Part shown: in pieces, positions 2,831 to 64,000 of the stretch
How the letters are laid out: each line of letters opens with the position of its first letter
Position numbering within the stretch: position 1 is the stretch's first letter
From: Lytechinus pictus
Lineage: Eukaryota
Length of the DNA: 64,000 nucleotides
Assembly: GCF_037042905.1 (NCBI RefSeq)
Contig: NC_087246.1
Span: 34,844,001 to 34,908,000, forward strand
Direction: 5' to 3'
The notes under the pieces: model-generated
Databases searched by the model: none
The model's input: only the letters and a program-made list of their open reading frames with translations
What the model was told of the DNA's origin: nothing
Position numbers and translations under genes: made by a program

Positions 2831-3135
2831 TTATACAGGGGCTACGGAACAGTTTTGAAGGAGGGGGGGGGGGTGGGGGTTGAGCCGGCTGACCATAAAG
2901 AAAAAAATCATGGCCCCGTCTTATAAAGTATTACGATTGATCCAATAAATCTCAACTGTGTGGAAATGCATTATACCATAGTTTTTTTCTACAGGAAATT
3001 TGCTCAATCAAAGAGAAAACAAAGAGAATCCTACCGATTCTTCAAGAGAAAAATGAACGTATATATACATCATAATTATGTATAAAATATTTTGAACAAA
3101 TTTGCATTTTAGATGTTGACGTTGCTGGCCGTCCA

Positions 3136-3295
3136 CAGGGTCCGCGGAACGGTGTTGAAAGTGTGGGGGGCTGACCATGCAAACAATCACAATAATATGG
3201 TCCTTTTTACGTTTTTGTACACCGTTTTGGAAAAAGAGGGGGGAGGGCTGAAGCCCCCCCCCCTCGACCCCCGGTACCGCGGCCCGCGGCCCCTG
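3136..3295. mobile_element. Short GC-ended MITE with 5-bp TSD
   Basis: CAGGGTCCGCGG...CCGCGGCCCCTG flanked by GTCCA on both sides. Confidence 0.65.
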
Positions 3296-4483
3296 GTCCA
3301 TAGTTCACTTTTATTTCACTTTTATTTACTGCCATTGTCATTATCTTCTGTATTCTGTATGTATCAATGGGTGTCGATCGGTATTCTTGGTTGGGGGGGG
3401 GGGGGGTCTTGATAGACACAAATGTTCTTGTGGATGGGGATCTTTCAACATTACCCCCACTAAAATCACAAGTTAGGACATTTGGGAGTGGTTGATATGC
3501 ATGGTGTTCTTGGAAATTCCTTCATTGTTGCAGTGTACTGTACTTATATAATTTTTTTGAAAATTCAATTTGTGTTACAAGTAAGCCTATTCTAAACTCA
3601 TACGAAAGAAAAAATGACAAAAATTGTCTGGACCATGTACAAAGTGATCTGTTTATTGAGCATGATGTATACAACTTCTCTCTTAAATCTAACCCGACTG
3701 GCAATATCTTTTTTTTTCTTAATGCATGATGATAAAATGCAGATTCGGACAAATTAAGACTAGCACAAATTACAAACTATGTGGCTTCTCGTGCGCCATC
3801 GGGCTTACCGTCATTCCTTAGACGATTTTAACCCTGGATTTTAACATGTTTTAAATGCTTTATAAGTGCATGAAACAAAAACAAACATAAAAAAATCAAA
3901 ACTCAACTGTCATGTTATGATTTTTCTCCAACATTTTCTTGAACCATCAGTGTGTAATATCTGCTAATATATGTGTTAAAATGAAATTTACGTACCGCAT
4001 GAGTGTGCTCATACTATAATCATCACTATAATCATCATGATCAAACTTTTCATTTTTTCATAATCATTATCATAATTTTTCTACCCTTAATTATTGGGGG
4101 GGGGGGGGGGTGATAATACAGGCCACCCCCCACTTGAAATATTGGGGGGGGGGTATATCCCCCCATCCCCCCGTGATCGACACCCAGATAGTCACTATCA
4201 AATGTATTTCTTGAATTTCTGAATAATGTGTAAAAATCGATGACAAAATTTGAATTTTTGTAATAAATATATTTGCTCGACCGCTTCGCTCTCTCGAGAC
4301 TTTTTGTAAATTTTGACCGATACACCATATCCGGCCCCTTAAAACTTTTGGCCTATTACGCCACTGATCATTGCAGGCGACAACACCTGCGAACTAATTT
4401 GAGTTTAGAAAGGCCTGTATATTAGTATAATACACAAATGCATACATACCTAACTGAGAACGATATTGTTTTGGATATGTTAA

Positions 4484-5078
4484 AGGGGAATCCAACCCAA
4501 TTAAAAACTTGTTTTTATAAGAAAAAGAAAAATCAGACAAGTTGATAGGTGAAAGTTTGAACAATATTGGACAAACAACAAGAAAGTTATGAATTTTTTA
4601 AAGTTGTAAATATTGGTAATCACTATACTCATGGAGACTTCAAATTGGCCGCATATGGGATGTCATAGTGATGTAAGGCAAGGACTACTCTTCCATGTAC
4701 TCCACTACATATTACGGCTAAAATGTCATTTTTCCTATAAGTTTTATTTCAAATTATATTTTTCTTTCATGAGGACATTAAACAATATACTACCTGGGTT
4801 ATATTTAGATTACTGCCCCAGGGGAATTGGTACTTAGGAGAATACCACAAATCCCTGATAATAAAGTACATGGCCTATGGGAAAGTTGTCCTTGCACCTT
4901 GTCATAATTTACTTACCCAGTTGCCAATTTGAAATCTACATACTATTAGTGATCCCAATTTTAAAGCAGCTATAACTTTCTTTTTTCTTGTCCGATTTCT
5001 TTCAAATTTTCACCATTCTGTTTAATTTATTTTTCTCCTTCCCAATACAACATTTTATGGCCAAGGCTGGATTCCCCT
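4484..5078. mobile_element. TTAA-target MITE (Kolobok-like)
   Basis: TTAA|AGGGGAATCCAACC ... GGCTGGATTCCCCT|TTAA. Confidence 0.85.
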
Positions 5079-51000: not shown

Positions 51001-54000
51001 AAGTCCTATCAGAGGGAATCTTACCCCTGCTGCATCTGTTGTAGAGTCTGTTGAAGGTACATAAAACCTCATCTCCATGAGCGAGACCTCTGCATCGTCG
51101 TTTTGGTGGAATTCGAGGATGACTTCATTCTTCGCTGTCGTTGCGTGGCAGACATTACCAAGAGGAAGCTGGAAGGCTGATTTCTTTTCAACGTGAAAGT
51201 CAAGCTCGGAACCTGTCAAATAAAAGAATGAAAGGTATGTTGTTTTCATTTTCAACTGAGCAATTTCAGAGGCAATAGGATCGGGGGGGGGGGGGGGAAG
51301 GGAATGTGTTTCAATATGTGTGTACTCTAGAAGTTTTAACAGTTGAATTGCTGTCGTATAACTATAAGACACCATTAAAAAGAATGAGCCATGTTTAGCT
51401 GATGCTTTGGTGGGGAATCCCGCCTGGTATCTTTTGTCTTCCAAACTTCCAATCCTGACAAACATTTAGGAAAGTTGCAGTGAAATCCTGCATTCAACAC
51501 AGATGTGGTCAAAGCATTTAATAAGGTACCTTTAAAACCACATTGTGATGTAAGAAAACGGAACTTAAAATCAAGTAGCGTACCTTCAAATCTGGCTGTT
51601 CCCCAGTTCCATCCTTTCAATGATAGTTCTTTGTCTTGAAGTTCCACGTTGTAATGCCTCTGAAGAAAATCGGCTACTTTCTCCCGATCCTAAGATGATT
51701 AATTGAAAAAAAAAATTATCATCAGTACACTGTTACCTACATGTATTAAAAACTAAATTCTATCATGATAATAATCATCTAACCCTATTTCATATGGCGG
51801 TTTTTCAGACCTAGTGTTTAGAGAATCTGTTTTACTCCCCCCCCCCCCCTTCAGATCTCAGCCACAATAACGGTCTGATCAACGCAAAATCCTGCATAGA
51901 CCAAAGGGCATGTGCAAAGGGTGATGTCAAAAAGTTCTTTCCATCAAAAAAATTGTTTTGTACTATTTTTATCAAATTATTCAAATCAGATTTACCACAA
52001 ATTTCCTGGTCTAACCCCCCCCCCCAGGTGGTTTAGGGTTAATATAGCATTTCTTTGTTACAATTCAGACATTGATACCAATTATTTGAACATGTTGGAC
52101 CACATTTAACTACAACACCTTCCCAATGGTACACAATTTTCTGCAATATAATCTAAAACAAGAGAATTTTAAGACAACTAGCACAAAATCAAAACCAACT
52201 CACTGATTCTTTGAAGCCATCATATTTGAAGATCGATCCTGATTTGAGATAGAGCTTGAGCTCAAGACCCCTGGCGACCCGGATCCAGTTCGTCCTTTCC
52301 AGGTCACCCGATTGAATCTGATCAACCTTGCCTGTCTTGTTGTTCTTGAATGTCACGCCTTGTTCGCTCAACCTCAGACGGCCGCTATTCTATCATGTGT
52401 GTGAGAACAGAAGGAGGAATATCATAAAACGTAGAGAAACAGGCCGTTTCAGAAAGCTGGTGATCCTTTCTTGTGTTGTGGTAAATAATATTTGTTATCA
52501 AAATCAAATGTTCATTGGCGATTATTGAGCGCGTAAGGAAGGTTCATCAGTCATTCTTAAAGTCGCTATCAAACAGCTTTATGAAACACCCACCTGTGAG
52601 GGGGTACATGTATATCATTCCAACACTTTTCATCACAAACGTGATTGGCTGGCGCATTTGTATGCTCACGCTGCAAAAGAAACGAAGACGATCGATCGTT
52701 CGTTGGAACCGTACACCGGCACTTTGGAATTTAATTTTTCAATCTTAAATCACATATTTCAAGAAACTGGTAAGCTGATTGCGCGATTTGCGTGGTGTCG
52801 CCAAGCGGAAGACAAAGAAATCAAGATGGCGACGCGTAAACACTGTCACTGCTGTAAGCTCTTCCCATCTTTTCATAACATTTTTCTCATTTTTTAAATG
52901 AATTCTTCTTTAAAAACGAAATCGATATCGCAGAAATGTTGGAAATGAAGTTGAACCCCATGTAGGCCTACATGTTTTAGGGCTAGATCTTTTAGAGGGA
53001 AAGTAGAAATCTCGGGGGCGAAAGTTTCAGGTTTTGTGGCCGTACGTGCGTGAATATACCTTGACTCTTGACGTCCCAGGCGTCAGCGGGGAGTAAGCTA
53101 GACAGCTGGCAGCCGTCTGTTTCGAGGAGTTTTTAAACATTTTTTTATTTTTTTTATTTCTCCTCGTACACAGACGGCTCGCTAGCGTGCAGCCACCATT
53201 AGGGGACTTGCAATGCAAAATCCCCCCGTCGGGGCTCTTCAATTTTGTCTTTAATGAATAAAATTTTTGAAAATTAACGCGACCAAAATGCAAATTAATA
53301 TTCCCTCTTGGCATTAATTGCCAAAAAACAGAGAAAAATCAAGTTAAAAGGAACAACAAGTGGAATGCCTCTGGCCGTCTCACCTGCATCACGCGATTCA
53401 ATATAGCAGCAGTGCTGATTTTGAAAACTACTATAACTCGCACAAGATGTTCAGTGATACTTGGTTACTCTTATTTCCACGTTTTATGAACTAGACCAAT
53501 ACACTTATAGAGATATGATGGCAATTCAACAAATACCCCCAACGTGGCCAAAGTTCTTTGACCTTACATGACCTTTGACCTTGATCATGTGACCTGAAAC
53601 TCGCACAGGATGTTCAGTGATACTTGATTACTATTATGTCCAAGTTTTATGAACTAGACCAACACACTTTCAAATTTATGGCTGTAATTCAACAAATACC
53701 CCAATTTGGCCAAAGTTCATTGACCCTAAATGACCTTTGACCTTGATCATGTGACCTGAAACTTGCACAGGATGTTCAGTAGTACTTGATTACTATCATG
53801 TCCAAGTTTCATGAATCAGATCCATAAACTTTCAAAGTTATGATGGTAATTCAACAGATACCCCCAATTCGGCCAAAGTTCATTGACCCTAAATGACCTT
53901 TGACCTTGGTCATGTGATGTGAAACTCATGCAGGATGTTCAGTGATACTTGATTAACCTTATGTATAAGTTTCATGAACTAGGTCCATATATTTTCTATA

Positions 54001-54246
54001 AGTTACGATGACATTTCAAAAACTTAACCTTAGGTTAAGATTTTGATGTTGATTCCCCCAACATGGTCTAAGTTCATTGACCCTAAATGACCTTTGACCT
54101 TGGTCATGTGACATGAAACTCAGCCAGGATGTTCAGTAATACTTGATTAACCTTATGGCCAAGTTTCATGAACTAGGTCCATATACTTTCTAAGTTATGC
54201 TGTCATTTCAAAAACTTAACCTCAGGTTAAGATTTGGTGTTGACGC

Positions 54247-54277
<31 letters not shown>

Positions 54278-55845
54278 GGAAAAGCGGCGCCTATAGTCTC
54301 ACTCTGCTATGCAGGTGAGACAAAAACAGTGACTTACCTCGGCTGTCGCGCAAATTCACTTCCCCGTTTTATCCGCTCTTAAGTACATAAACATATGGCC
54401 AGTGAGTCCCCTGTACAGATCGCGCTAGAACTTCGGTCTCTGTATTTGGTGAGTGAAGCCAACGGAGTTCAGCTGAACGACCAACATAACAGAGACTGAA
54501 GCTTTTGGTCTAGGAGTAAGCCTACGTAGAGTAGATGACTTTTTAAAGTTTTACTCCCCAGACGCCTCCAGGCTACCCGTGCCTGAGCTATGCGAGCCAA
54601 AATTGCCAGTCCAGTGCCTGTTTGCCCAGTCAGACTGCAGGTCCCAAGAAAGTGGCTTCTTTCATCCAAGTGATATTCATGACTTGAGATGTTTTGAATA
54701 TTTAATGAGCTTGATGCGGACCAAAACACCTCTTTTCATTCGGTCATTGCTGCTCTAATTGTGCATCGAATTTCATGAATTTGGTACCATTGTAAAGAAG
54801 AAGAATCATTCTTTCAGGTCATGTGTTTGGATTTATTCAAAAATTTTGTAATATAGGTTAAAATTTTGATCTAAAATATGCTACAAAATAAATATTTTTA
54901 CCCGACAAAAGCTGCTATTTTCACACTCTATTTTTGTTTGAGCCCAAATGATTTTTATATCATGATAAAGCTGAATATGTATGCTTTGAAATAATAGAGG
55001 TTTCAAAATAAGAATTGGTTTAATCGGGTCAAGATCACACTTTTCATTTGCCAAGTACATAAAGCAGTTTGAAAACAAGAATACTACACTCTGATTGGTC
55101 AAAGAGACCACATAATGGCAAATTCCAACGGTCCCAGTGCCTGGGTTCGTGGGAAGGTCACACTTCCCATGTGGTAATCTCCTCAAATACCCCGCGCCTG
55201 TTGTTCTGTGAACCTTATCCAGCCAATCAGAACTCTGGATTTCATGCAAGTACAAAATTTCAGAAATCTCGTCTTGTACCTTGGTGGGAAAAGTGTGATC
55301 TTGACCCGATTAAAAGGTGCCGCATATCAAGAGTGGCATTGTGAGAAAGTACAGAAGTTCAGCTTTATGGTGATATAGATATCATTGAGGCTCAAAATAA
55401 AAAGTTTTGCACAATTTGCAAAAGAAAACAGAGGAAGAAAATTCAGTTTTGAGGCACATTTTCAGGCCAGAAATTTACTTATTTAACAAAATATTGTATA
55501 CAAAATAAATGACCAATATGAAAGAGTAACTTTTACTCTATCTGATGGTGCAATAATATTTCATTTAACTTGAGGTTAAAACAGGTAAATTCTTAGAGAA
55601 AGAAAATCTCACGAATCACGAGATTTTGCAAGGAGGAGGATTCAGCCACGAGATGATTTGGATGAATCTGGCCTTTTTGCTCATTAGCATAGGGACCTGC
55701 GGTCTGACTGCCCGACTGTTTGTTAACTTGGTCTTGGAGAAAAATTCATGACAAAAGATTATTTGCAAAATGAGAGAATGGAACGGGAACTCACCATAGC
55801 ACCCTTTACTTCCTGTGAAACATCAGGAAAATCCAACGTTTCCAT
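14957..55845 (-). CDS. SSRP1: SSRP1 (FACT complex subunit, HMG-box histone chaperone); 16 coding exons, 738 aa
   Basis: Hand-spliced exons give diagnostic SSRP1/Pob3 motifs in the expected order: [108 protein letters not shown] (HMG box), [13 protein letters not shown]. All junctions are GT-AG with matching phases and the exons sum to 2217 nt. Confidence 0.96.
15332..15807. mobile_element. TA-flanked MITE (copy A)
   Basis: TIR GGTGGTTTCAGACCGCCTCGA / TCGAGGCGGTTTGAAACCACC; inverted second copy at 26525. Confidence 0.9.
15815..16297. repeat. N-runs (15824-16037, 16050-16291) within an (ATC)n microsatellite
   Basis: Flanks and the island between the runs read CATCATCATC. Confidence 0.7.
18636..19125. 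mobile_element. Degenerate MITE with TTTCACAC/GTGTGAAA sub-repeats
   Basis: TTTTCACAATGCA ... TGCAGTGTGAAAA ends and repeated internal TAGC/GCTA motifs; boundaries approximate. Confidence 0.5.
19613..19873 (+). mobile_element. tRNA-derived SINE with (ATT)n tail
   Basis: A box TGGTCTAGTAG, B box GGTTCGAATCC, family body, (ATT)n 3' tail. Confidence 0.9.
19873..20033. mobile_element. ~160-bp hairpin MITE (copy A, left end clipped at SINE tail)
   Basis: GTCACATT...CGGCGGCCGTATGGCGAGTCGAAAACAGCC is mirrored at 19978-20025; homologue at 33251. Confidence 0.8.
20690..20830 (-). mobile_element. Degenerate tRNA-headed SINE, second family
   Basis: Minus strand reads GTGTAGTGGTTCAGT...GGTTTGAATC...GTCCTTTGCCAAGACACTAATCTGCATTTGCTACTCTCCACCCAGGTGT. 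Confidence 0.55.
22485..22943. mobile_element. MITE with poly-G/poly-C termini
   Basis: G-run+GGGCACTCA at the left, TGAGTGC+C-run at the right, internal GGGGTC sub-repeats. Confidence 0.7.
23066..23821. mobile_element. PIF/Harbinger deletion derivative, TSD TAT
   Basis: TIR GACCCCTGTTACACAT / ATGTGTAACAGGGGTC; GC-rich GAGGCCGG sub-terminal repeats; internal Arg-rich ORF remnant on the minus strand. Confidence 0.85.
26525..26991. mobile_element. TA-flanked MITE (copy B, opposite orientation)
   Basis: Reverse complement of 15332-15807 along nearly its whole length. Confidence 0.9.
27578..28181. mobile_element. TTAA-target MITE (Kolobok-like)
   Basis: TTAA|AGGACAAGTCCACC ... GGTGGACTTGACCT|TTAA; long imperfect inverted arms. 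Confidence 0.88.
28262..28635. mobile_element. MITE with poly-G/poly-C termini
   Basis: GGGGGGCCAGTCA..ATTGCTGTACACATGCGTGA mirrored by TCACGCATATGTACAGCAAT..TGACTGCCCCCC. Confidence 0.75.
29615..29777. repeat. N-run (29641-29777) following (ATT)n/(AGT)n
   Basis: Left flank ATTATTAGTAGTA. Confidence 0.6.
30606..31018. repeat. 141-bp tandem repeat, ~3 copies
   Basis: GGGTCAA anchor at 30730, 30871 and 31012; shared TTCAAGAAAGGGAACTCTAACA and GTGACATTAAAGCCAGC. Confidence 0.9.
31203..31592. mobile_element. Palindromic MITE, 8-bp TSD (copy B)
   Basis: Same family as 1037-1421; TSD GTTCTATA on both sides. Confidence 0.9.
32570..32851 (+). mobile_element. tRNA-derived SINE
   Basis: A/B boxes, body shared with the 19613 copy, (ATT/ATC)n tail. 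Confidence 0.9.
33251..33411. mobile_element. ~160-bp hairpin MITE (copy B)
   Basis: TACCTTGGTCACATTTG ... CAAATGTGACCAAGGTA, with ~65-bp arms. Confidence 0.85.
35186..36179. mobile_element. hAT-like fold-back: two inverted copies around a ~270-bp spacer
   Basis: Outer ends CAGGGCTCCACACTAAC / GTTAGTGTGGAGCCCTA; 35430-35615 is the reverse complement of 35890-36080. Confidence 0.75.
37391..37821. mobile_element. hAT-like MITE with 8-bp TSD and internal ~70-bp tandem repeat (x4)
   Basis: CATTAGCGTACCTA ... TAGGTACGCCACTG, TSD GTCTGTTG; unit TTGCTTGTCAATTTTTTTCTGGTGCGAAATGTCCTTTACTTGCGGTTGAAGAAC+T-run. Confidence 0.88.
39168..39452. mobile_element. Probable TA-flanked MITE
   Basis: TACCCGTTTCAGTAGCT..TGGTC versus GACCAAAGTTACTAAAAACGGTA imperfect TIR. 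Confidence 0.5.
39781..40032. repeat. N-run (39842-40029) within an (ATC)n-type microsatellite just after the SSRP1 exon 15 donor
   Basis: Flanks ATCATCATCATCTGCATCG and ATC. Confidence 0.7.
40039..40189 (-). CDS. SSRP1: SSRP1 coding exon 15 (SGKKSKSS...[18 protein letters not shown])
   Basis: CAG acceptor, GTATGG donor, 151 nt, phase 2/0; conserved (F/Y)KSKE(F/Y)xS motif. Confidence 0.9.
40482..40893. mobile_element. hAT-like MITE
   Basis: CAGGGTTCTACATAA ... TTATGTAGCACCCTG, repeated sub-terminal ACTTGCCC, degenerate CATA.. TSD. Confidence 0.75.
41240..41768. mobile_element. Cluster of small MITEs, including one (41503-41663) nested in a same-family copy (41363-41768)
   Basis: GGGGAGCGTTTCAT / ATGAAACGCTCCCC inner TIR; GGGGAAGCATTTCATGAAAG / CTTCATGAAACACACCCC outer TIR; GGGCCC-ended element at 41240-41362. 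Confidence 0.7.
41815..42110 (-). CDS. SSRP1: SSRP1 coding exon 14 (HMG box)
   Basis: [22 protein letters not shown]...KKAGELW...[12 protein letters not shown] acceptor, GTGAGT donor, 296 nt, phase 0/2. Confidence 0.96.
42841..43018 (-). CDS. SSRP1: SSRP1 coding exon 13 ([10 protein letters not shown]...KKRTKTS)
   Basis: CAG acceptor, GTAAGC donor, 178 nt, phase 2/0; acidic-to-basic linker. Confidence 0.93.
43592..43637 (-). CDS. SSRP1: SSRP1 coding exon 12, 46 nt ([15 protein letters not shown])
   Basis: TTTTCAG acceptor, GTAAGT donor. Phase 1/2 bridges exons 11 and 13, and it matches the conserved DxxFNP...DVAEE motif. Confidence 0.92.
44027..44162 (-). CDS. SSRP1: SSRP1 coding exon 11 (DTVNYDDIG...[12 protein letters not shown]...DSSS)
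   Basis: CAG acceptor, GTAAGG donor, 136 nt, phase 0/1. Confidence 0.94.
44629..44701 (-). CDS. SSRP1: SSRP1 coding exon 10 ([24 protein letters not shown])
   Basis: CAG acceptor, GTAAGT donor, 73 nt, phase 2/0. Confidence 0.93.
44985..45355. repeat. Degenerate ~25-30 bp tandem repeat abutting the SSRP1 exon 9 donor
   Basis: Recurrent AACTATCCAAACTCACTTTTCAAA variants. Confidence 0.65.
45360..45578 (-). CDS. SSRP1: SSRP1 coding exon 9 ([12 protein letters not shown]...LYPLERGF...FSSIE)
   Basis: CAG acceptor, GTGAGT donor, 219 nt, phase 2/2. Confidence 0.96.
46155..46283 (-). CDS. SSRP1: SSRP1 coding exon 8 ([11 protein letters not shown]...KITVPGNFK)
   Basis: CAG acceptor, GTAAGT donor, 129 nt, phase 2/2. 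Confidence 0.95.
46761..47300. repeat. N-run (46853-47242) within a degenerate (CAT/CAC)n microsatellite
   Basis: Both flanks are ATC/ACC triplet-periodic. Confidence 0.75.
47335..47438 (-). CDS. SSRP1: SSRP1 coding exon 7 ([19 protein letters not shown]...LNLT)
   Basis: TAG acceptor, GTAAGT donor, 104 nt, phase 0/2. Confidence 0.95.
47492..47905. mobile_element. PIF/Harbinger-type MITE (copy B)
   Basis: TIR AGGCGACCACACACCTTACGACTG / CAGTCGTAAGGTGTGTGGTGGCCT, TSD TAA. Confidence 0.88.
48444..49027. mobile_element. TTAA-target MITE (Kolobok-like)
   Basis: TTAA|AGGAGAATGAAAC ... GTTTCATTCTCCT|TTAA; ~180-bp imperfect inverted arms. Confidence 0.88.
49335..49470 (-). CDS. SSRP1: SSRP1 coding exon 6 ([11 protein letters not shown]...RQMFFV)
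   Basis: CAG acceptor, GTAAGT donor, 136 nt, phase 2/0. Confidence 0.96.
50116..50210 (-). CDS. SSRP1: SSRP1 coding exon 5 ([31 protein letters not shown])
   Basis: CAG acceptor, GTAATG donor, 95 nt, phase 0/2. Confidence 0.95.
51025..51212 (-). CDS. SSRP1: SSRP1 coding exon 4 (SELDFHVE...EFHQNDD...MRFYVP...DAAG)
   Basis: CAG acceptor, GTAAGA donor, 188 nt, phase 1/0. Confidence 0.95.
51584..51689 (-). CDS. SSRP1: SSRP1 coding exon 3 (DREKVADF...[11 protein letters not shown])
   Basis: TAG acceptor, GTACGC donor, 106 nt, phase 0/1; KGWNWG motif. Confidence 0.95.
52204..52389 (-). CDS. SSRP1: SSRP1 coding exon 2 (NSGRLRL...YDGFKES)
   Basis: TAG acceptor, GTGAGT donor, 186 nt, phase 0/0. 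Confidence 0.95.
52640..52859 (+). promoter_or_regulatory. Promoter-like CpG-rich stretch inside SSRP1 intron 1 with candidate plus-strand first coding exon (ATG 52826-52853, MATRKHCHC, phase 1)
   Basis: ATTGG (~52644), GCGGAAG ETS-like core (~52805), CAAGATGGCG YY1-type motif spanning the ATG, donor GTAAGC at 52854. No downstream exon identified. Confidence 0.4.
53099..54512. mobile_element. Non-autonomous DNA transposon with TAGAC...GTCTA termini and 9-bp TSD (AcademH- or MULE-like), interrupted by a Helentron-type insert
   Basis: GGAGTAAGC direct repeat at 53090-53098 and 54513-54521 directly flanks the 5-bp inverted ends. Confidence 0.6.
53355..54325 (-). mobile_element. Helentron-associated non-autonomous element (HINE/DINE-1-like) with internal 162-194 bp tandem repeats
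   Basis: Sub-terminal IR GTCTCACCTGCAT (53377-53389) / ATGCAGGTGAGAC (54309-54321), stem-loop 54296-54321, adjacent (GCC/GTC)n microsatellite, CTTGTT end, A/T-run insertion site. Confidence 0.75.
54627..55710. mobile_element. Non-autonomous CACTA/EnSpm-like element
   Basis: 19-bp TIR CAGTCAGACTGCAGGTCCC / GGGACCTGCGGTCTGACTG (one mismatch), 2-bp TSD CC, internal IR TAATCGGGTCAAGATCACACTTTTC (~55021 and ~55288). Confidence 0.8.
55795..55845 (-). CDS. SSRP1: SSRP1 coding exon 1 ([17 protein letters not shown])
   Basis: ATG at 55845-55843 in AAAC-ATG-G context, donor GTGAGT at 55794. Resembles the vertebrate N-terminus MAETLEFNDVYQEVKGSM. Not in the ORF track. Confidence 0.92.
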
Positions 55846-57189
55846 GTTTGGTAATAATGACAAATAGTCCTTCCAATAAAGATCAGACGATGATCATTGA
55901 CACCAAAAGTAAAAAACAATCTGGTAGAATCAGATTAACGTGTACTTGCTCTGGTATATACTGTCTAGTCTGTATTACTGATCACGCACACAATATAATT
56001 CGCATTATATTACCGTAAGGCCGTACGCGGTATATAGTACACAGCTCCTCGTCATAATATTTAAGGTTACCAAAAATTTTCTGTAGAATCTGATTTTTTG
56101 TGCTATTTCCCCTATTTTGAGGGTGCTGAACATGAATCTGCTTGTTGCCAAATTTATAAATGCCGTCTTCGACCGTTGCCATGGCAACGGATTAATTTCT
56201 CAAAAATAGCATGTATTTCCCTGTAAATGGTAGATAAACATGATATAAATTAGCCAATAGATTGAATTCAAGGTTCCAATTAAATACAAATGAAATTCAA
56301 AATATTTAAGATCATCAAATTGGTTCCAATTGGCCCGTTGCCATGGTAACGGCTCATTTTTCCTCCAGAAAAGTAAAAATTTTGATTTACAGAACTTTGT
56401 AGAATCTGTTTTTTGTTTCATTTTCCCTGCGTTTAGGGTGTTAAACATAAGAGTGGTTTTTGCTAAATGTATAAATACACTCTCATTCCATTGCCATGGC
56501 AACCAGATAATACCTTATTTGGTAACAATAGAAATAACATGGTAAAAAAAGACAATGGCGAGAAATACAATAAAAGCGACCTACATGTAATCTACATACG
56601 TTGGGTTTTTCCAACTCATTTACTAAAAAAACTACATAAGTCTTATGCATGAGTTTATTGGAATGATAGGAATTGATGTTGCCTTGACAATGCTTGAATT
56701 TAAAGATATATATCAATATTGCAAATTGGCCGTTGCCATGGTAACAGCTTATTTTTTCTCAGAAAAGTATACATTTGATAAAATATATTGTAGAATCTGA
56801 ATTTTCTTTCATTTCCCCTAATTATATGATGCTAGATCTATATGTGCTTGTTGCTAAATGTATAAATACAATCTTAGGCCATTGCCATGGCAACCAAATA
56901 ACTTGGGGGAGATAATGGTGGAAAATACTATGAAAATCACAATCTACATGCGTAAGGTTTGAACCATTAAATATTGAACAAAAAATACAGTAAGTGGTCT
57001 GCATGAGTTCATTAGCAAGAAAAGAATTGCTGTTGCCTTGGTAACACTTGCATTTAATATAAATATAAATATGAATGTTGCAAACCTCCCATTGCCATGG
57101 TAACATCTTATTTTTCTCAGAAAATTACAAAGTTGAAAAAAACTTCAAATTTTCCTTTCATTTCCCCTAATTTTAGGGCGCTCAACATA

Positions 57190-57840
57190 CAGTTGAGGCC
57201 AAAAGTTTACATACACCCATGGAATTCAGTGAAATTTGTTCGTTTGCCAAACATCCTAGAATTTACTATATCTTCAGAAATATAAATACTACCATGACGA
57301 ATTTGTTGTCACATGAAAGAGCATATCAAGCTCTTTCACATGATAAGGATGCCGATGGGATTAAAGTAGATTTCAGGTGAAAATTTTTTTAAAGAAAAAT
57401 AGTAATATTCGTATAAAATGTATTCTATTGTTATTATATTTTCAAACGTCGTTTCAGAGAAATATATAAATGTCACATCTATGATTTATATTACTTTTCC
57501 TATCATGATATGTCACCACTGAACAAAAAGTGTGATCTGAAATGTTTGTGTTGACAAGTACCGTAACTAGCACAAATATGAAATTTTTTTGTAAAGTTTT
57601 TATTTTTAAATCGTCTAAAATATGAAGATTTTTTAGGGAAAAATTACACCTAAATATTTTAAGCTCCTGATGACAAAGCAATGTGATGAAGGGGCATGAC
57701 ATACCGGTACTCATTTGTTTGATATCAAATGTGTCATGATAGCACAAATATTTTATAAGATACAGTAAGTTTAATGATGTTTGGCAATTGTCAACTTTTA
57801 AAAAAATTACTGGGTGTATGTAAACTTCTGTCCTCAACTG
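57190..57840. mobile_element. Non-autonomous Tc1-family element
   Basis: TA|CAGTTGAGGCCAAAAGTTTACATACACCCA ... TGGGTGTATGTAAACTTCTGTCCTCAACTG|TA. The TIR resembles Tc1/Sleeping Beauty ends, and the element interrupts a module of the fold-back left arm. Confidence 0.9.
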
Positions 57841-58894
57841 TACATATGCTTGTTAATGTAAAAATACTTTCTCGGGCCATTTTCAATTTAGAATTAAATC
57901 CAATCCACATAACATGTACTCAAATAAATTATCCAATTACACACATTTTAATGCTGGACAAGTTTTGAAGAAAAATGGTACTTATTCTGCATGAAATCCA
58001 GTATTGTAACTCCAAAATGACCGCAGATAGTCATTTTGAGTATAGTGATTTGTGCTTAAAAAGTGTTAAATGTAATACTAGGGGGGGCATACATTTGATG
58101 AATGAAAATTTTTAATCTGTCAGGAGGCGATGTGGTCTTGACCTCCTAATCTGAGATTATTGCCATAACCAAATTGGCAGGTGGTGTCCATTTTGAAAAA
58201 GTAAACTTAGAAATATTTTCATGATTTTGAAAATATATGGATCCATATTATGACATTTCAACAAAACATTGGGTAATCATTAAATATAATTAATCATATT
58301 GCACAAGTTTCATGTCATATGATCAAGGTCAGAGGTATTTCACGATCATCAAAATTTGACCATGTTGTATTATCATCATTGAATCTCATAAAGTTTCTGA
58401 AAAAACAAACCTTTGAGAGTGCGTATATAAATCTATTTCAAGAAAGTTGGACATAAAGGTATTCAACTATCACATCATTGTGCATGAGTTTCAGGTTAAA
58501 CTTATGGTCAATGAACTTTGACTGTATTGTGGTATCAACATCAAAAACTTTACTTAGATGTATTAATTTTCAAGATAATTAGATATCATGTCACTAGGTG
58601 AAGGTCAAGGGTCTTTTGAGGTTAAAAAAAACACCTTAGGATTCTATTATTAAATGAATGGGTTTTTCATGAAAGTCCCACATTGAGCCTACATTAAAAA
58701 TGGAAGAATTTTACCTCTGTTTCCTCAAAAGGTCAATTATATCTAATAGGAGGAGGCCAGGATTATGTCAATTTGCCAAATAAACTTTGGAGTTAAATTA
58801 TCTTGAACAGCTTTCTATTAAGATAAATACATACATTTTAACATTTATAGCACTTCTTCATGTAAACATGCTCAAAGCACTTTCCAATATAATT

Positions 58895-59160
58895 GTGGGG
58901 GGCATCGTGGTCTAGTGGTTAAGACTCTTTCTTTCAATCTGAGGGATATGGGTTCGATTCCCAGCCAGGGTGTGTTTTCCTTCAGTAAGAAATGTATCCA
59001 TATTGTGCTGCATTCAACCCAGGTGAGGTAAATGGGTACCTGCAGGATGTAAGTCCTTAAAAAGCTGTGAGCACCGGATGCGGTAATCTATCTTAACCGG
59101 GGTAATATAGGAACACTATTAATACAATTCCTATATTAGTTTATTTATAATTATAAAAAT
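58895..59160 (+). mobile_element. tRNA-derived SINE (same family as 19613 and 32570)
   Basis: A box TGGTCTAGTGG, B box GGTTCGATTCC, shared body TTTCCTTCAG..AAGAAA..TGTGCTGCA.TCAACCCAGGTGAGGT.AATGGGTACC. Confidence 0.85.
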
Positions 59161-59164
59161 GAAT

Positions 59165-59700
59165 AATTCTACTTTTCAAGTGCTTTCAATACATAAAGTG
59201 GGTGTTACAAATAAAATTCATAGGTTTGCAAGCTTTAAAAAAACAATTGTACAGAAGGACATGAACGGATTTTGAATATTGGGACCAGTGAAACTCATGC
59301 ACTGTTGACCTAAGTTGGGGGATAGAAAAGGGTCTGTAAACAAAAACCCAGCATGAAATGTATTGTGGTGTCAGGTTATCAATGGACAAGTAAACAAAGC
59401 AATTTTTTCTTTAATTCTGTTTTTGACCAGTAGCAAGTGAATCTCTTTGAACAAAGGAAACACATGATCATACTTTCTGGCCATTGAAATGGTACCGACT
59501 GCTCGATTCTGAATGTGCTGTAGTGACTATTATCTAGTCGGCTGAACACCAGTTCAAAGTATCCCCAAGTGGTTATAAATACAAAGTAAAAATTAAAGGT
59601 CCCAGTACAAAACCCTGAGGAACGCCATATTGCAACCCATGACCCTTTTTTTCTTAATGACTACCAACTGCAATTCGTTTTAAAGGCAAGGTCAGTATGT
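59165..59700 (-). mobile_element. Highly decayed L2/CR1-type LINE fragment
   Basis: Minus-strand translation LQYGVPQGFVLGPLIFTLYL*PLGD around 59560-59640 matches the RT motif GVPQGSVLGP. Confidence 0.65.
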
Positions 59701-60603
59701 CAAAGGTAGTTCAGATTTTGATTTCTTGACTCTAAAACCCCCAAATAAATATTTTGAACAACTCTATCAAAATGGAATCATAATTGTAATTTGTAATCAA
59801 AGTTGTAATTTTTGAAAATGACAGGCAGCTGTCAGTTTGATTTTTATGGCGGCAATCTCTGATTAGGCGGTCAAGTTTAGGTCAGTTAACTGTGTGGACT
59901 AAAGATTTTAATTTCCTAACCTCAAAAATCCCCATGTTGCTATTTTAAAAAGCTCATTTATAGCACAAATCAACCCAAATTCCGTTTTTTTCAAACTGGC
60001 CACCAGCAGCCACTCTGGATATTTTAATTATACCATAGTCAATCTCTGTTCAGGAGGTCAAGATCACTCCAACTCATCAAATAGACTTAAGATTTTGATT
60101 TCCTTTTCCCTATAAAACTCATTCTTTATAATATTTTTATCAGCTTTATAGCAAAATCCACCCCCAAATTTCTTTTTAAAATGGTTTCCGGCAGCCATTT
60201 CAAAGCTTTTATACGAATTTCATGGTCAATTTTTCTTCATACAATTAATTGTCCAGAAACGCATTATACATGATTGTGATTGGCAAATTTATTTTATTCC
60301 ATTAACGTTTAGCTTTAAAATATAGACATTTGTGACCCATAAATTGGCAGCCACCTTGGAGTTTGACGTTGGGGTAAGTCAATTCAGCAAATAGATGTCA
60401 CATGTCAATCTCTTGAAAACTTTACCCCTAAATCAATATTTCTGTCAGATTACTAGGCCAAATTGCCCAAAATATTCTCAAAATGGTATCTAGCTGAATT
60501 TTCCCTAATTTCACAAACCCTTAGAAAAATTGGCATACTGGCTATTTTTTTTTTTTTATTAGAGCACAAATGGTCAAAAAAAGATCTTTACACTCCACAT
60601 TCC

Positions 60604-62482
60604 TCACTTGAACCTAGGAAGTGATTCGCTAGGTCCATAGGAGAGCTTGTGCGTCACAGACTGTAGATGGTTGGACCATAGGGTGACCCTTTGATTGTGA
60701 GCAGAGCCATCAAGGGATTCAGTCGAGTGAAGGAAGCTACATCTTTTTTTAAATCTCTTTTTGGCAGGTTCATAGTTAAAGGGTGGATGAAGAGGGTGAT
60801 CTTCTTGCTCGTTTTTCCACCTTTGCTGACACCTATCTTCTGATGTGTGAATGGGCAATACCACACAGTAGGTAGAGATCATCTGCTCTTGTTTTGTCGC
60901 AGCCAGTAATTGCTCTGCAAGCAGCATTCAGGGCTGTATCAATCTTTGCAGCATGTGATGACCTAAAACGGATGGGGACTGCATACTCAGCAGTCTAGTA
61001 GCATAGAGCAAGAGCTGTCGCACGGATGGTTTTGGCATCTGTTCCCATTTTATGTTGGCAAGCTTCTTCAGGATGCTGTTCCTTGCTCCAACTTTAGCCT
61101 TTGTCTTGGAAACATGGTCTTTGTAGGTAAGGGAACTGTCTAGGGTGACGTCAAGGTAGATTGGCTTACTGGTGTGTTCCAACCATTTTCTATACCATCT
61201 GAACCTTAGTTATTGGTCTGCATCTCTGTTTTTTAGGTGAAAAGCACTGAGTTGGGTTTTTTCTGGATTTTCCCAGAGATGATTTGCAGCGTAGTAAGGA
61301 GTCATGCCTACCAGAGCATTGCTGAGTGCTTTTTCATCTCTTCAGAGGACTGTTTCTGTGAAGCAATGCAAATGTCATCAGCGTACAGGTAGCTCTCACT
61401 ATTTGGTGGATTGGTTGGTCATTTGTGTAGATGCTAAAGAGTGGGACGATGATTCTTCCTTGTGGGAGACCTTTTCTGTGTCAGCCATCTGCTACTGAAA
61501 CCACTGAGATGCACAAAAACTGCTGATTTGAGAGCATGCTCTGAATCATCTGTGTTAGCTAAAGCCTTCCTTTGTCATCTCAAAGACTTACCTTGTGAGT
61601 ATTCGATGATTGTGTCATAAGCTGCAATGAGGTCAACAAAGGCTGCTCCAGTTATCAACCCTTTCTCGAAGCCACCATCTTCAATGCACTGTGCCAGATT
61701 CAGCAGTTGACTAGTACAGGACTTTCCGGCCTAAATCCTGCCTGTTCTGGAATGAGGAGCTCATTCACCAAGGGAGCAATGTGGTTGAGTAGGAGCCTTT
61801 CAAAGATCTTGTATGTGTGACAAAGCAGAGATATGGGCCGGTAGCTCTTTGCAATGGCTGGTCTTTTGCCTGGCTTGAGTAAGGCAACTACCCTTGATTT
61901 CCTCCATAAGTTTGGCATTGTGCTTTCACTCAGACAGAAGTTTAGCATGTCAAGCAGCCGTTGGATTGCAACAGGTCCAAGATGTTTCATCTGCTCACAG
62001 ATCGAGGACATCATCCAATCCAGCTGCCTTGCTGATCTTCATTGCTTGATAGCATTGCACAAGTCGTTCATGCTGAAAGGTCTTGTGAACTCAGATGACT
62101 CTTGGCAGGCTGTCCGCACACTTTTAGGTTGGATCTTCGCGGGTGATTATGAGGGTTACCTTGGTTGTTCACTAGAAGCTGGTGGCCACTTGGCCGGCGG
62201 TAACTTGGGACCTAGATTGGGACTTTGTAGAGTCTTTCCCAAGGATCCGAATCTGCATGGTGTTTCTGCCGGTCCTGAATATAGCTTGTACGGCATTCTT
62301 GTGGAATATTCTTCCTTGATGATTTCTTCAGCAGCTCTAAAAATGTGTCGTAATGAGTAGGGAGTGCAGGGAGGTTCTGAAGATATGTATCCAGATCTAT
62401 GGCAAACTGCTCAGTTTACTTTCTTCAGGTTGAAAGTCTGCAGAAGGGAACTTTGCGAGGAGTGATGTTTACCACGGCATCA
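60604..62482 (-). mobile_element. Degenerate non-LTR retrotransposon (Vingi/Ingi-clade-like) reverse transcriptase region
   Basis: LWRKSRVVALLKPGK...SYRPISLLCHTYKIFERLL...EQAGFRP, AAFVDL..AYDT, LYADDICI (~61363-61389), YLDVTLDSSLTYKDH...RNSILKKLAN. Multiple frameshifts and stops. Clade assigned from recalled motif similarity. Confidence 0.85.
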
Positions 62483-63692
62483 GGCCATTTGCAACATTGA
62501 TATTTATCATATAAAATTAAATTATTTTATACACTACCAAAGCAGCAGCAACAATAATATCAATGTTTAGCAACCTACGTGTATACTTTGGCGGAAATGA
62601 AAGAAAAATCGGACTCTACATATTTTTATTAAAACTTTTCTGGTCTGAGCCGTTACCATGACAATAGGCAATTTGCAACATTGATATTTATTAATAAAAT
62701 CAAGCGTTCCCAAGGAAACATCAATTTTTATCATTCTAATGAATTCATGCAGAATAATTACGTAATTTTGGTTTTGGTCATGTAGATTAGTTCGTTTTTA
62801 CTGTACATCCCACCATTACCTTTTTCAACATGTTATTTTTTACCAAATAAGTTGGTATTTGGTTGCCATGGCAATGGTCTGAGATGGTACTTACATATTT
62901 ACCAACAAGCATATTTATTTTTAGCAACCTAAACTTAGCGGAAATGAACGAAAAAAATGTGACTCTATATGTTTTTATCAAAATGTGTTCTTTTCTGATA
63001 AAAATAAGATGTTACCATGGCAACGGGCCATTTGCAATATTGATATTTATCTTTAAATTCAAGCATTCTCAAGGCAACATCAATTCCTACCATTCCAATA
63101 AACTCATGCATAACACTTATGTAGTTTTTATTCTAAATGAGTGGGAAAAATCCAATGCATGTAGATTACATGTAGGTCGCCTTTATTGTATTTCTCGCCA
63201 TTGTTTTTTTTTACCATGTTATTTCTTTTTTTACCAAATTAGGTATTATTTGGTTGCCATGGCAATGGAATGAGAGTGTATTTATACATTAAGCAAAAAC
63301 CACTCCTATGTTTAACACCCTAAACGCCGGGAAAATGAAAAAAAAAACAGATTCTACAACTGTAAATCAAAATTTTTACTTTTCTGGAGGAAAAATGAGC
63401 AGTTACCATGGCAACGGGCCAATTGGAACCAATTTGATGATCTTAAATATTTTCGAATTTCATTTGTATTTAATTGGAACCCTGAAATCAATCTATTGGC
63501 TAATTTATATCATGTTTATCTACCATTTACAGGGGGATACATGCAATTTTTGAGAAATTAATCCGTTGCCATGGCAACGGTCCAAGACGGCATTTATAAA
63601 TTTGGCAACAAGCAGATTCGTATTCAGCACCCTAAAAATAGGGGGATAAGCACAAAAAATCAGATTCTACAGAAAATTTTTGGAATTCTTAC

Positions 63693-63920
63693 TACTTGCC
63701 GCCTACTAATATGTCATGCATTTGCAGAACAGTAACCTAATCATGTCGCGGGAAAAATTGGAACATGCGCGAAAGTCATTGTCGCCCTCTCTAGTCGTGC
63801 CGGGGTAAAGGGGAAATCCCGAATCGTTGACTCGAGTCGATCGACTTTACACACGAGTCGGGACACGGAGTCCAATCAATTTGGTCCCCATCTCGATATT
63901 TCTACCAGATTTAAATCCCC
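63693..63920 (-). promoter_or_regulatory. Probable SSRP1 promoter and non-coding first exon: two E2F sites, CCAAT box, CTCF-like motif
   Basis: TTTCCCGC (63748-63755) and TTTCGCGC (63767-63774) on the minus strand, CCAAT 63872-63876, GTCGCCCTCTCTAGT 63781-63795, locally CpG-rich. Candidate donor GTAAGA at 63692 and 5'UTR acceptor CTACCAG ending at 55921. Confidence 0.5.
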
Positions 63921-64000
63921 TATTTACGTAAGCCCAAGTTTGGTTGCTTCATATTTCTCTTTTTCTTTTCAAAAGATTATACCTTTTTACAAAATCAATG

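What the first reader, a model, noticed from the sequence alone, without database searches (positions are those of the whole stretch)
56062..63690. Fold-back transposon carrying a dozen RFX X-box palindromes sits between the probable SSRP1 promoter and its first coding exon
Seen: ~1.2 kb mirrored arms built of modules centred on GTTGCCATGGCAAC or near variants. Left-arm positions are 56175, 56337, 56490, 56732, 56881, 57033, 57091; right-arm positions are 62652, 62862, 63011, 63253, 63402, 63565. Established: GTTGCCATGGCAAC is the canonical palindromic X-box bound by RFX factors, which regulate ciliogenesis genes. Inference: this family could disperse homotypic RFX clusters and here add RFX input (activating or silencing) to an E2F-type cell-cycle promoter. 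Alternatively the palindrome is simply the transposase-binding motif. The arms could also pair in the pre-mRNA, bringing the distant 5'UTR donor near its acceptor.
Basis: partly seen in the sequence, partly recalled or inferred. Interest (0 to 1): 0.7.

Follow-up and report, generated by a model that had tools for sequence, protein, structure and literature searches.

The report
Academ-like transposon with X-box arms
A 7.7-kb non-coding "jumping gene" whose two mirrored ends are built from repeats of a perfect RFX-type palindrome has landed right at the start of the sea-urchin SSRP1 gene; the palindromes are the best-conserved part of the element and most likely serve its own transposition, while any control by the host factor RFX is untested.

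Summary
Twelve matches (up to 2 mismatches) to GTTGCCATGGCAAC lie only in two inverted ~1.1-kb arms, against 0.25 expected.

The true element is window 56035-63708 (7,674 bp), ending TAGTACACAG...GCCGCCTACTA with a 3-bp target duplication (ATA). About 50 copies exist in the 812-Mb genome, and 22 of 24 further pairs have 3-bp duplications. It has no transposase.

Four 12.7-12.9-kb elements carry the same left terminus (three were also paired with the right one) and a 1,687-aa intact ORF. That ORF has a DDE transposase core, a FEN/XPG-type nuclease and a CXC tail, which fits AcademX.

The palindromes are the most conserved part of the arms: 96-97% identical between sister families whose arms are otherwise 68-72% identical. 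The genome holds 1,852 perfect 14-mers, with about 1 expected.

The likeliest role is as subterminal binding sites for transposition. RFX binding is untested.

The intron idea is not supported. An RNA contig runs unbroken from the ATG exon to 10 nt inside the left terminus and ends there, so the mRNA probably starts at the transposon's edge. The E2F/CCAAT region is displaced 7.7 kb.

Two first-reader notes on other windows of this genome (s1-311749, s1-322217) describe the same kind of X-box array.

The parts
56035..63708 (+). Whole non-autonomous transposon (7,674 bp), termini 5'-TAGTACACAG...GCCGCCTACTA-3'
   Evidence: Homology with other copies starts and stops here. About 50 left and 49 right termini occur genome-wide. 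tblastn with the partner's transposase finds nothing in it.
56032..56034 (.). Left target-site duplication ATA
   Evidence: Perfect 3-bp duplications were found in 7 of 7 and then 22 of 24 copies.
63709..63711 (.). Right target-site duplication ATA
56035..57187 (+). Left arm: a 27-nt end-specific terminus, then three tandem units (56076-56396, 56391-56787, 56782-57150)
   Evidence: It is 94-97% identical over its full length to 30 or more other copies.
62469..63708 (-). Right arm: an inverted, diverged copy of the left arm (85-93%; units 63360-63680, 62969-63365, 62620-62975)
56175..56188 (.). Palindrome GTTGCCATGGCAAC (perfect; unit 1, site A)
   Evidence: Unchanged in 20 of 21 copies.
56337..56350 (.). 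Palindrome GTTGCCATGGTAAC (unit 1, site B)
56490..56503 (.). Palindrome ATTGCCATGGCAAC (unit 2, site A)
   Evidence: Unchanged in 21 of 21 copies.
56732..56745 (.). Palindrome GTTGCCATGGTAAC (unit 2, site B)
56881..56894 (.). Palindrome ATTGCCATGGCAAC (unit 3, site A)
57032..57045 (.). Degenerate palindrome GTTGCCTTGGTAAC (unit 3, site C)
57091..57104 (.). Palindrome ATTGCCATGGTAAC (unit 3, site B)
   Evidence: Unchanged in 21 of 21 copies.
62652..62665 (.). Degenerate palindrome GTTACCATGACAAT (3 mismatches)
   Evidence: Read. Below the threshold used.
62862..62875 (.). Palindrome GTTGCCATGGCAAT
63011..63024 (.). Palindrome GTTACCATGGCAAC
63253..63266 (.). Palindrome GTTGCCATGGCAAT
63402..63415 (.). 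Palindrome GTTACCATGGCAAC
63565..63578 (.). Palindrome GTTGCCATGGCAAC (perfect)
57190..57840 (.). Nested Tc1-like miniature element (ends CAGTTGAGGCCAAAAGTTTACATACACC, TA duplication at 57188-89 and 57841-42); part of the family's common interior
   Evidence: (I14). Present in most copies.
60604..62014 (-). Broken LINE reverse-transcriptase fragment in the interior, shared by the copies
   Evidence: ORFs. RVT_1 at E 3.4e-6, below Pfam's cut-off. Shared at 93-97% with other copies.
55795..56046 (-). SSRP1 exon 1: 5'UTR plus ATG at 55845 ([17 protein letters not shown]). Its 5' end reaches 10-12 nt into the transposon.
   Evidence: ATG exon. table 8: run X1 record 1 covers 55795-56044 with 0 mismatches and joins to 52203-52389.
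52203..52389 (-). SSRP1 exon 2 (POB3_N domain)
63712..64000 (-). E2F/CCAAT-rich, CpG-rich stretch, probably the pre-insertion SSRP1 promoter, now 7.7 kb from the ATG exon (E2F-like 63748-63755 and 63767-63774; CCAAT 63757)
   Evidence: This rests on motif content only; function is not shown.

Best explanation
Window 56035-63708 is a 7,674-bp non-autonomous cut-and-paste DNA transposon with a fold-back-like build. Each ~1.1-kb arm is three tandem units of about 320-395 bp. Each unit opens with a copy of the terminal motif (TGTAGAATCTG) and carries two strongly conserved palindromes, CC(A/G)TTGCCATGGCAAC and TTGCCATGGTAAC. The 5.3-kb middle is filler: a nested Tc1-like miniature element, a dead LINE fragment and unassigned DNA.

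It is most likely moved in trans by a 12.7-12.9-kb partner with the same termini. The partner's single 1,687-aa protein joins a DDE transposase core, a FEN/XPG-type 5' nuclease and a CXC tail. This make-up plus the 3-bp target duplication fits AcademX.

Shown: the termini, the duplications, the copy number, the partner and its folds, and the excess conservation of the palindromes. Inferred: the palindromes are subterminal binding sites that the element needs for transposition, bound by the transposase or a cofactor. Their identity with the RFX consensus may be coincidence or may mean that a host RFX protein is that cofactor.

This copy inserted at the 5' end of SSRP1, 190 bp before the ATG and about 35-65 bp after a pair of E2F-like sites. 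The mRNA's assembled 5' end now lies 10-12 nt inside the left terminus. Transcription of this allele therefore most likely starts at the transposon's edge rather than the element being removed as an intron.
For: Motif and arms.

Termini and 3-bp duplications: (7 of 7, then 22 of 24).

Family: about 50 and 49 termini. Full-length copies are 93-97% identical, interior included. Short derivatives of 667-1,241 bp keep the ends.

Partner: four ORF copies at about 100% identity, all in elements with the same left terminus, with duplications TAG and ATT. Conserved D543/D546, D745 and E995, plus an acidic set in the C-terminal part. The C-terminal model (pLDDT 94) matches Xrn2, T5 FEN, T4 RNase H and EXO1 at Foldseek E 3e-6 to 3e-4. 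A profile of that domain hits EXO1 at E 0.0015. The middle domain is closest to Hermes, P-element and RAG1 transposases, Z 9.2-5. AcademX makes 3-4 bp duplications and encodes a nuclease (PMC10045372).

Palindrome conservation: 0.0039 against 0.0176 substitutions per site in the left arm (21 copies), and 0.0095 against 0.0209 in the right arm (25 copies). Variable columns are 11% against 22%, Fisher p 2.7e-4. The palindromes include the longest invariant blocks among units that are 71% identical overall. Identity between sister families is 96-97% in palindrome columns and 68-72% elsewhere. There are 1,852 perfect 14-mers genome-wide, none for the reversed control, mostly clustered at unit spacing.

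SSRP1.
Against: No binding experiment exists for either the transposase or RFX. The ORF-bearing partner has palindromes only in its left arm; its right end shares just 131 bp and no palindrome. Palindromes at both ends are therefore not strictly required. Mobilisation in trans is inferred from shared termini and duplications, not shown. Academ membership could not be checked against reference Academ sequences. The mRNA 5' end rests on one assembled contig from one run; two unaligned letters at its tip and an AG at 56046-56045 leave a splice junction possible. Within-family conservation in the right arm alone is not significant (p 0.09-0.13).
Confidence: 0.7

Rival explanations
1. One reading: the palindromes are working RFX sites. 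The family spreads clusters of RFX sites, and this copy adds RFX input (activating or silencing) to SSRP1.
For: Two sites match the published palindromic X-box consensus 14 of 14, and ten more have 1-2 mismatches. Conservation across diverged families shows that some protein-level constraint acts on exactly these bases. With the mRNA 5' end at about 56046, the first palindrome lies about 130 bp upstream of it and six more lie within about 1.05 kb, which is a promoter-proximal position.
Against: No occupancy or accessibility data could be examined. Conservation is a property of the transposon lineage (about 50 copies plus sister families), not of this locus, so it points to a role in the element's life cycle. 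No RFX-type DNA-binding domain or other link to RFX was found in the partner protein. SSRP1 is a general chromatin factor, not a ciliary gene.
Confidence: 0.15
2. The element is removed as a 5'UTR intron. Transcription starts at the E2F/CCAAT region right of 63708. A donor in the right terminus (minus strand ...GCAAGTA|GTAAGA) is spliced to the AG at 56046-56045 (GAGGAG|CTGTG). About 27 nt of transposon ends stay in the 5'UTR, as seen with maize Ds/dSpm insertions (from memory).
For: The contig ends 2 letters past position 56044, and those letters did not align to the genomic AG (table 8). A GTAAGA donor-like site lies 17 nt inside the right terminus. An intact E2F/CCAAT stretch sits just upstream.
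Against: The acceptor is poor: G at -3 and a purine-rich tract in place of a pyrimidine run. No joint from this place is among those listed. A contig that stops 2 nt past a junction needs extra assumptions, such as alternative donors.
Confidence: 0.2
3. The palindromes are kept for a DNA-level reason without a sequence-specific protein, for example cruciform or hairpin formation during transposition, or homogenisation by gene conversion between units.
For: They are perfect or near-perfect palindromes set in tandem and inverted repeats.
Against: Conversion would homogenise flanks as well, yet flanks are 68-72% identical while the cores are 96-97%. A structural need would tolerate compensated changes, but the same letters are kept. 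Sites A and B keep distinct variants (GGCAAC and GGTAAC) across units and arms.
Confidence: 0.08

Closest known systems
AcademX lineage of the Academ superfamily of DDE DNA transposons (Kapitonov & Jurka 2010; Kojima 2020, as cited in PMC4455052 and PMC10045372)
   Same: 3-bp target duplications. The partner encodes a DDE-type transposase together with an XPG/FEN-type nuclease. It has terminal inverted repeats. The protein family is spread over many animal phyla.
   Different: Here the transposase, nuclease and CXC tail are in one 1,687-aa ORF. The arms of the non-autonomous derivative are ~1.1 kb of tandem units with X-box-like palindromes. No direct sequence comparison with reference Academ entries was possible.
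Foldback elements (Drosophila FB, Galileo, Tetris; sea-urchin TU elements, Liebermann 1983, cited in PMC4079207)
   Same: Long inverted arms made of internal tandem repeats, no coding capacity, and many rearranged or shortened derivatives. PMC4079207 notes that the foldback build can arise independently by loss of the transposase and lengthening of the inverted repeats.
   Different: The target duplication is 3 bp, not the 8-10 bp given for Tetris. It has a large 5.3-kb unique middle. The units are 320-395 bp. The arms are only 85-93% alike. No sequence comparison with TU elements could be made.
Subterminal repeat motifs of En/Spm (CACTA) and Ac/Ds elements (from memory)
   Same: Many copies of a short motif, in both orientations, spread over the subterminal few hundred bp and needed in cis for transposition. 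CACTA elements also make 3-bp duplications.
   Different: The termini are TAGTA...TACTA, not CACTA...TAGTG. The motif is a 14-bp perfect palindrome spaced about 150-240 bp apart over more than 1 kb. Its function here is inferred, not tested.
RFX X-box (GTTGCCATGGCAAC; PMC3414849)
   Same: The sequence is identical to the palindromic consensus.
   Different: The sites are borne by a transposon at 1,852 perfect copies per genome rather than at single promoter sites. No evidence of RFX occupancy was available.

Membership tests
AcademX (Academ superfamily) | Target-site duplication of 3 or 4 bp | tested here: met
   Perfect 3-bp duplications in 7 of 7 and 22 of 24 elements, including the ORF-bearing ones. 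The criterion comes from PMC10045372.
AcademX (Academ superfamily) | Encodes an XPG/FEN-type nuclease | tested here: met
   The C-terminal domain model (pLDDT 94) matches Xrn2, T5 flap endonuclease, T4 RNase H and EXO1 at Foldseek E 3e-6 to 3e-4. A profile of the domain hits EXO1 at E 0.0015. Acidic residues are invariant.
AcademX (Academ superfamily) | DDE transposase | tested here: met
   The middle domain (Pfam DUF6589) models with pLDDT 86. It is closest to Hermes, P-element and RAG1 transposases at Z 9.2-5, which is moderate. D543/D546, D745 and E995 are conserved in 59 sequences.
AcademX (Academ superfamily) | Sequence kinship with reference Academ transposases (Repbase) | not testable with these tools
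   No Repbase or Dfam library was on hand, and the Kojima 2020 paper is not held.
Foldback elements | Long terminal inverted repeats built of tandem subrepeats; non-coding | tested here: met
Foldback elements | Arms make up most of the element, with a short or absent middle; 8-10 bp duplications in the Tetris/Mutator-like members | tested here: not met
   The middle is 5.3 kb of 7.7 kb. The duplications are 3 bp.
RFX X-box site | Match to the palindromic consensus GTTGCCATGGCAAC | tested here: met
   Two perfect sites and ten with 1-2 mismatches. The consensus is quoted in PMC3414849.
RFX X-box site | Bound by an RFX protein in vivo or in vitro | not testable with these tools
   No ChIP, CUT&RUN or ATAC data could be laid on the arms.
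   The RNA contig is continuous from 55795 to 56044 with 0 mismatches. There is no joint in the 190 nt between the ATG and the element. An acceptor inside the terminus (56046/45) is not excluded.

The most novel reading that the evidence does not exclude
The transposon lineage has adopted the host RFX site as its own cis element. Arrays of optimal X-boxes recruit RFX dimers, either as an architectural cofactor of the transpososome or to time the element's activity to RFX-rich cells such as germline or ciliated embryonic cells. As a by-product the family has seeded more than a thousand optimal RFX sites across the genome. At SSRP1 the left arm, with seven X-boxes within about 1.1 kb, now acts as the proximal promoter and supplies the transcription start of an essential gene.
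Probability: 0.12. Interest if true: 0.8.

Novelty: new member of a known kind. Interest (0 to 1): 0.45.

Why it matters
Three points would interest people who work on transposons and gene regulation.

1. The non-autonomous element can be paired with an intact, very recently active partner: four ORF copies about 100% identical. This gives a tractable Academ-type system in a model echinoderm.

2. The element's conserved cis motif is letter for letter the optimal RFX site, at about 1,850 perfect copies per genome. Any RFX motif scan, ChIP or ATAC analysis in this species will be dominated by this family. If RFX does bind, the family is both a large sink for RFX and a source of its sites.

3. An essential chromatin gene tolerates a 7.7-kb insertion between its E2F/CCAAT region and its ATG, with the mRNA apparently starting at the transposon's edge. 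This is a natural test of promoter rewiring.

None of this changes what is known about how such transposons work in general.

Tried and rejected
- Interior ORFs of the window element were scanned against Pfam. Only a sub-threshold RVT_1 fragment turned up and no transposase. tblastn with the partner's protein against the element and the whole window found nothing. An autonomous reading of this copy is rejected.

- Harbinger and CACTA were considered because of the 3-bp duplication. They were rejected because the duplications are not TWA (GTA, ATA, TTA, ATT, TAC, AAA and others), the termini are not CACTA, and the partner protein has the DDE plus FEN-nuclease make-up.

- Sequence search of the whole partner protein against PDB found no hit. 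The atlas search gave only unnamed clusters. The large protein search found 58 relatives, all unnamed or labelled 'Tesmin/TSO1-like CXC'.

- Foldseek on the 736-aa middle domain gave nothing at E <= 0.001. Only the second-look aligner brought out the transposase fold.

- An RFX-like or other known DNA-binding domain was sought in the N-terminal 520 aa. None was found.

- The Kojima 2020 AcademH paper could not be read.

- Paper searches for RFX sites on transposons in sea urchins found nothing relevant. That library is limited.

- The raw RNA reads (X19, X20) come from a diverged organism and gave too little depth at exon 1 to place a start site.

- A joined SSRP1 protein model was not built or searched.

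Full report
**Observation**

GTTGCCATGGCAAC with up to two mismatches occurs 12 times in the window. The expected number from shuffles is 0.25, and none of 100 shuffles reached 12. All 12 fall in 56175-57104 and 62862-63578. Two are perfect, and a thirteenth site at 62652 has three mismatches. The two regions are inverted copies of each other at 85-99% over about 1.1 kb. Only the boundaries need correcting.

**Boundaries and mobility**

The left arm matches more than 30 places in the 812-Mb genome at 94-97% over its whole length. In several of these places the whole 7.6 kb, interior included, is shared at 93-97%.

- Alignment of ends and flanks puts the termini at 56035 (TAGTACACAGCTCC...) and 63708 (...GCCGCCTACTA). 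That adds 27 and 17 end-specific bases outside the mirrored part.
- The element is flanked by a 3-bp direct duplication, ATA here. All 7 copies first examined have one, as do 22 of 24 further pairs. The commonest are GTA, ATA and TTA.
- Exact-pattern scans find about 50 left and 49 right termini genome-wide, with none for the reversed controls.
- Most pairs lie 6.2-7.9 kb apart. Four are short derivatives of 667-1,241 bp that keep only the ends.

This is a cut-and-paste DNA transposon family.

**Coding capacity and the partner**

The window copy encodes no transposase. Its interior ORFs give only a sub-threshold reverse-transcriptase fragment at 60604-62014 on the minus strand. It also holds a nested Tc1-like miniature element at 57190-57840 with a TA duplication.

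Elements of 12.7-12.9 kb have the same two termini and their own 3-bp duplications (TAG, ATT). They share only about 500 bp of the left arm (81%) and the last 131 bp with the window copy, and they carry one intact 1,687-aa ORF. The genome has four copies of this ORF at about 100% amino-acid identity. Each sits in an element with the same left terminus. The other relatives in the genome are only 24-31% identical, apart from one broken 70-72% fragment.

| Part of the ORF | Evidence |
|---|---|
| Whole protein | Pfam sees only DUF6589 |
| Middle domain | In 59 aligned relatives from many animal phyla, D543/D546, D745 and E995 are conserved. The model (pLDDT 86) is closest to Hermes, P-element and RAG1 transposases, Z 9.2-5. 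|
| C-terminal domain | Seven conserved acidic residues. The model (pLDDT 94) matches Xrn2, T5 flap endonuclease, T4 RNase H and EXO1, Foldseek E 3e-6 to 3e-4. A profile of the domain hits EXO1 at E 0.0015. |

A DDE transposase plus an XPG/FEN-type nuclease with 3-4 bp duplications is how AcademX is described (PMC10045372). I could not compare with reference Academ sequences, so membership is consistent but not proven. That the partner moves the 7.7-kb element in trans is inferred from the shared termini and duplications.

**The palindromes**

Each arm is three tandem units of about 320-395 bp. Each unit starts with a copy of the terminal motif TGTAGAATCTG. In the alignment of the six units, overall identity is 71%. 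The longest invariant block is TTGCCATGGCAAC at site A, and the TTG.CATGGTAAC block at site B is also conserved.

- Among 21 left arms, substitutions per site are 0.0039 inside the palindromes and 0.0176 elsewhere.
- Among 25 right arms, the figures are 0.0095 and 0.0209.
- Counting variable non-CpG columns instead of sequences gives 11% against 22%, Fisher p 2.7e-4. The right arm alone is not significant.
- The strongest evidence comes from sister families. Their arms are 68-72% identical to this one and their outermost ~110 nt did not align with it, yet the palindrome columns are 96-97% identical. These elements carry up to 19 palindromes each.
- Genome-wide there are 1,852 perfect 14-mers against none for the reversed control and about one expected from base composition (my arithmetic). 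In the listed sample, about two thirds are clustered at unit spacing.

The palindromes are therefore under selection in the transposon lineage itself. The most economical reading is that they are subterminal binding sites needed in cis for transposition. This is an inference.

One caveat: the ORF-bearing partner has palindromes only in its left arm. They cannot be strictly required at both ends.

The motif equals the published palindromic RFX consensus (PMC3414849). Whether a host RFX protein binds it is open. I found no RFX-type domain in the partner protein, and no data on occupancy were available.

**Position relative to SSRP1**

SSRP1 lies on the minus strand.

- The POB3_N exon is at 52204-52395 and SSrecog is at 51049-51219.
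- The exon at 52203-52389 begins at residue ~18 of the protein.
- The ATG exon is at 55845 ([17 protein letters not shown]), only 190 bp from the transposon's left end.
- Right of the element lies a CpG-rich stretch (observed/expected 0.90) with two E2F-like sites (63748, 63767) and CCAAT boxes. This is a plausible pre-insertion promoter, now 7.7 kb away.

RNA evidence:

- In run X1, a 2,566-nt contig with no mismatches joins 52203-52389 to 55795-56044 and ends two letters later.
- Exon 1 is thus continuous from the ATG to 10 nt inside the transposon, with no acceptor in between.
- Depth in X1 beyond 56045 is about zero.
- A repeat-induced break in a 31-mer assembly graph would be expected about 20 nt further in (inference).

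I therefore read this as the approximate 5' end of the mRNA. The TE-bearing allele is expressed and probably initiates at the transposon's edge.

A splice from a GTAAGA donor in the right terminus to the AG at 56046/45 is not excluded. The acceptor is poor, with G at -3 and no pyrimidine tract.

Pairing of the arms in pre-mRNA has no support.

**Comparison with known elements**

- It works like other DNA transposons with subterminal repeat motifs, such as En/Spm and Ac (from memory).
- It looks like a foldback element. PMC4079207 notes that this build arises repeatedly by loss of the transposase and lengthening of the inverted repeats.
- It fails the foldback features of a short middle and 8-10 bp duplications.
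- By its partner it fits AcademX.

Two first-reader notes on other windows of this genome describe the same kind of X-box arrays, one calling it Academ-like. I reached the same reading independently from the TSDs and folds.

**Verdict**

This is an ordinary kind of mobile element, well characterised here. It has one unexplained coincidence, a conserved cis motif identical to the optimal RFX site, and one locally interesting consequence, a start site of an essential gene at the transposon's edge. Interest is moderate.

A joined SSRP1 model was deliberately not built or searched.

Noticed in passing
window 57190-57840: Tc1-like miniature element (ends CAGTTGAGGCCAAAAGTTTACATACACC, TA duplication) nested in the transposon and carried along in most copies. 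RNA depth over it is 20-90 in the raw-read runs, so the family is transcribed somewhere in the genome.
   Followed up: partly
window 53350-54350 (SSRP1 intron 1): High-copy repeat with very high RNA depth (1,000-4,000 per strand in X19 and X20). Reads 'go back' 315 and 153 bp and skip 967 bp, which points to an abundant tandemly arranged or circular repeat transcript (tables 2 and 5).
   Followed up: no
window 52457-52572: Hundreds of RNA reads join 52457 to 52570/52572 on opposite strands. This looks like a small inverted-repeat (hairpin) element in the intron just upstream of SSRP1 exon 2 (table 5).
   Followed up: no
L027/L028 (G000:C5:12271260-12284126), about positions 2980-4740 of the joined element: The ORF-bearing partner carries a 1.7-kb array of tandem repeats of about 85-90 bp between its left arm and the end of the ORF. 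It also has three copies of a different palindromic motif (GGCGGCCATTTTGAA / TTCAAAATGGCGGCC) near its right end.
   Followed up: no
L061 (G000:C1:10147600-10156400), L062, L063, L066: Sister families with 10-19 palindromes per element, most of them perfect. Arm units are about 75% identical to the window's, and the outermost ~110 nt did not align with it.
   Followed up: partly
G000, many places: At least 20 further intact or nearly intact ORFs of 1,000-1,540 aa that are only 24-31% identical to the partner's protein. This is a diversified superfamily of these transposase-nuclease genes in the genome.
   Followed up: no
G000:C5:12271260-12284126 and C5:13583283-13596149: Two ORF-bearing copies of identical length (12,867 bp), 1.3 Mb apart on the same chromosome. 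This may be a segmental or assembly duplication rather than two insertions.
   Followed up: no
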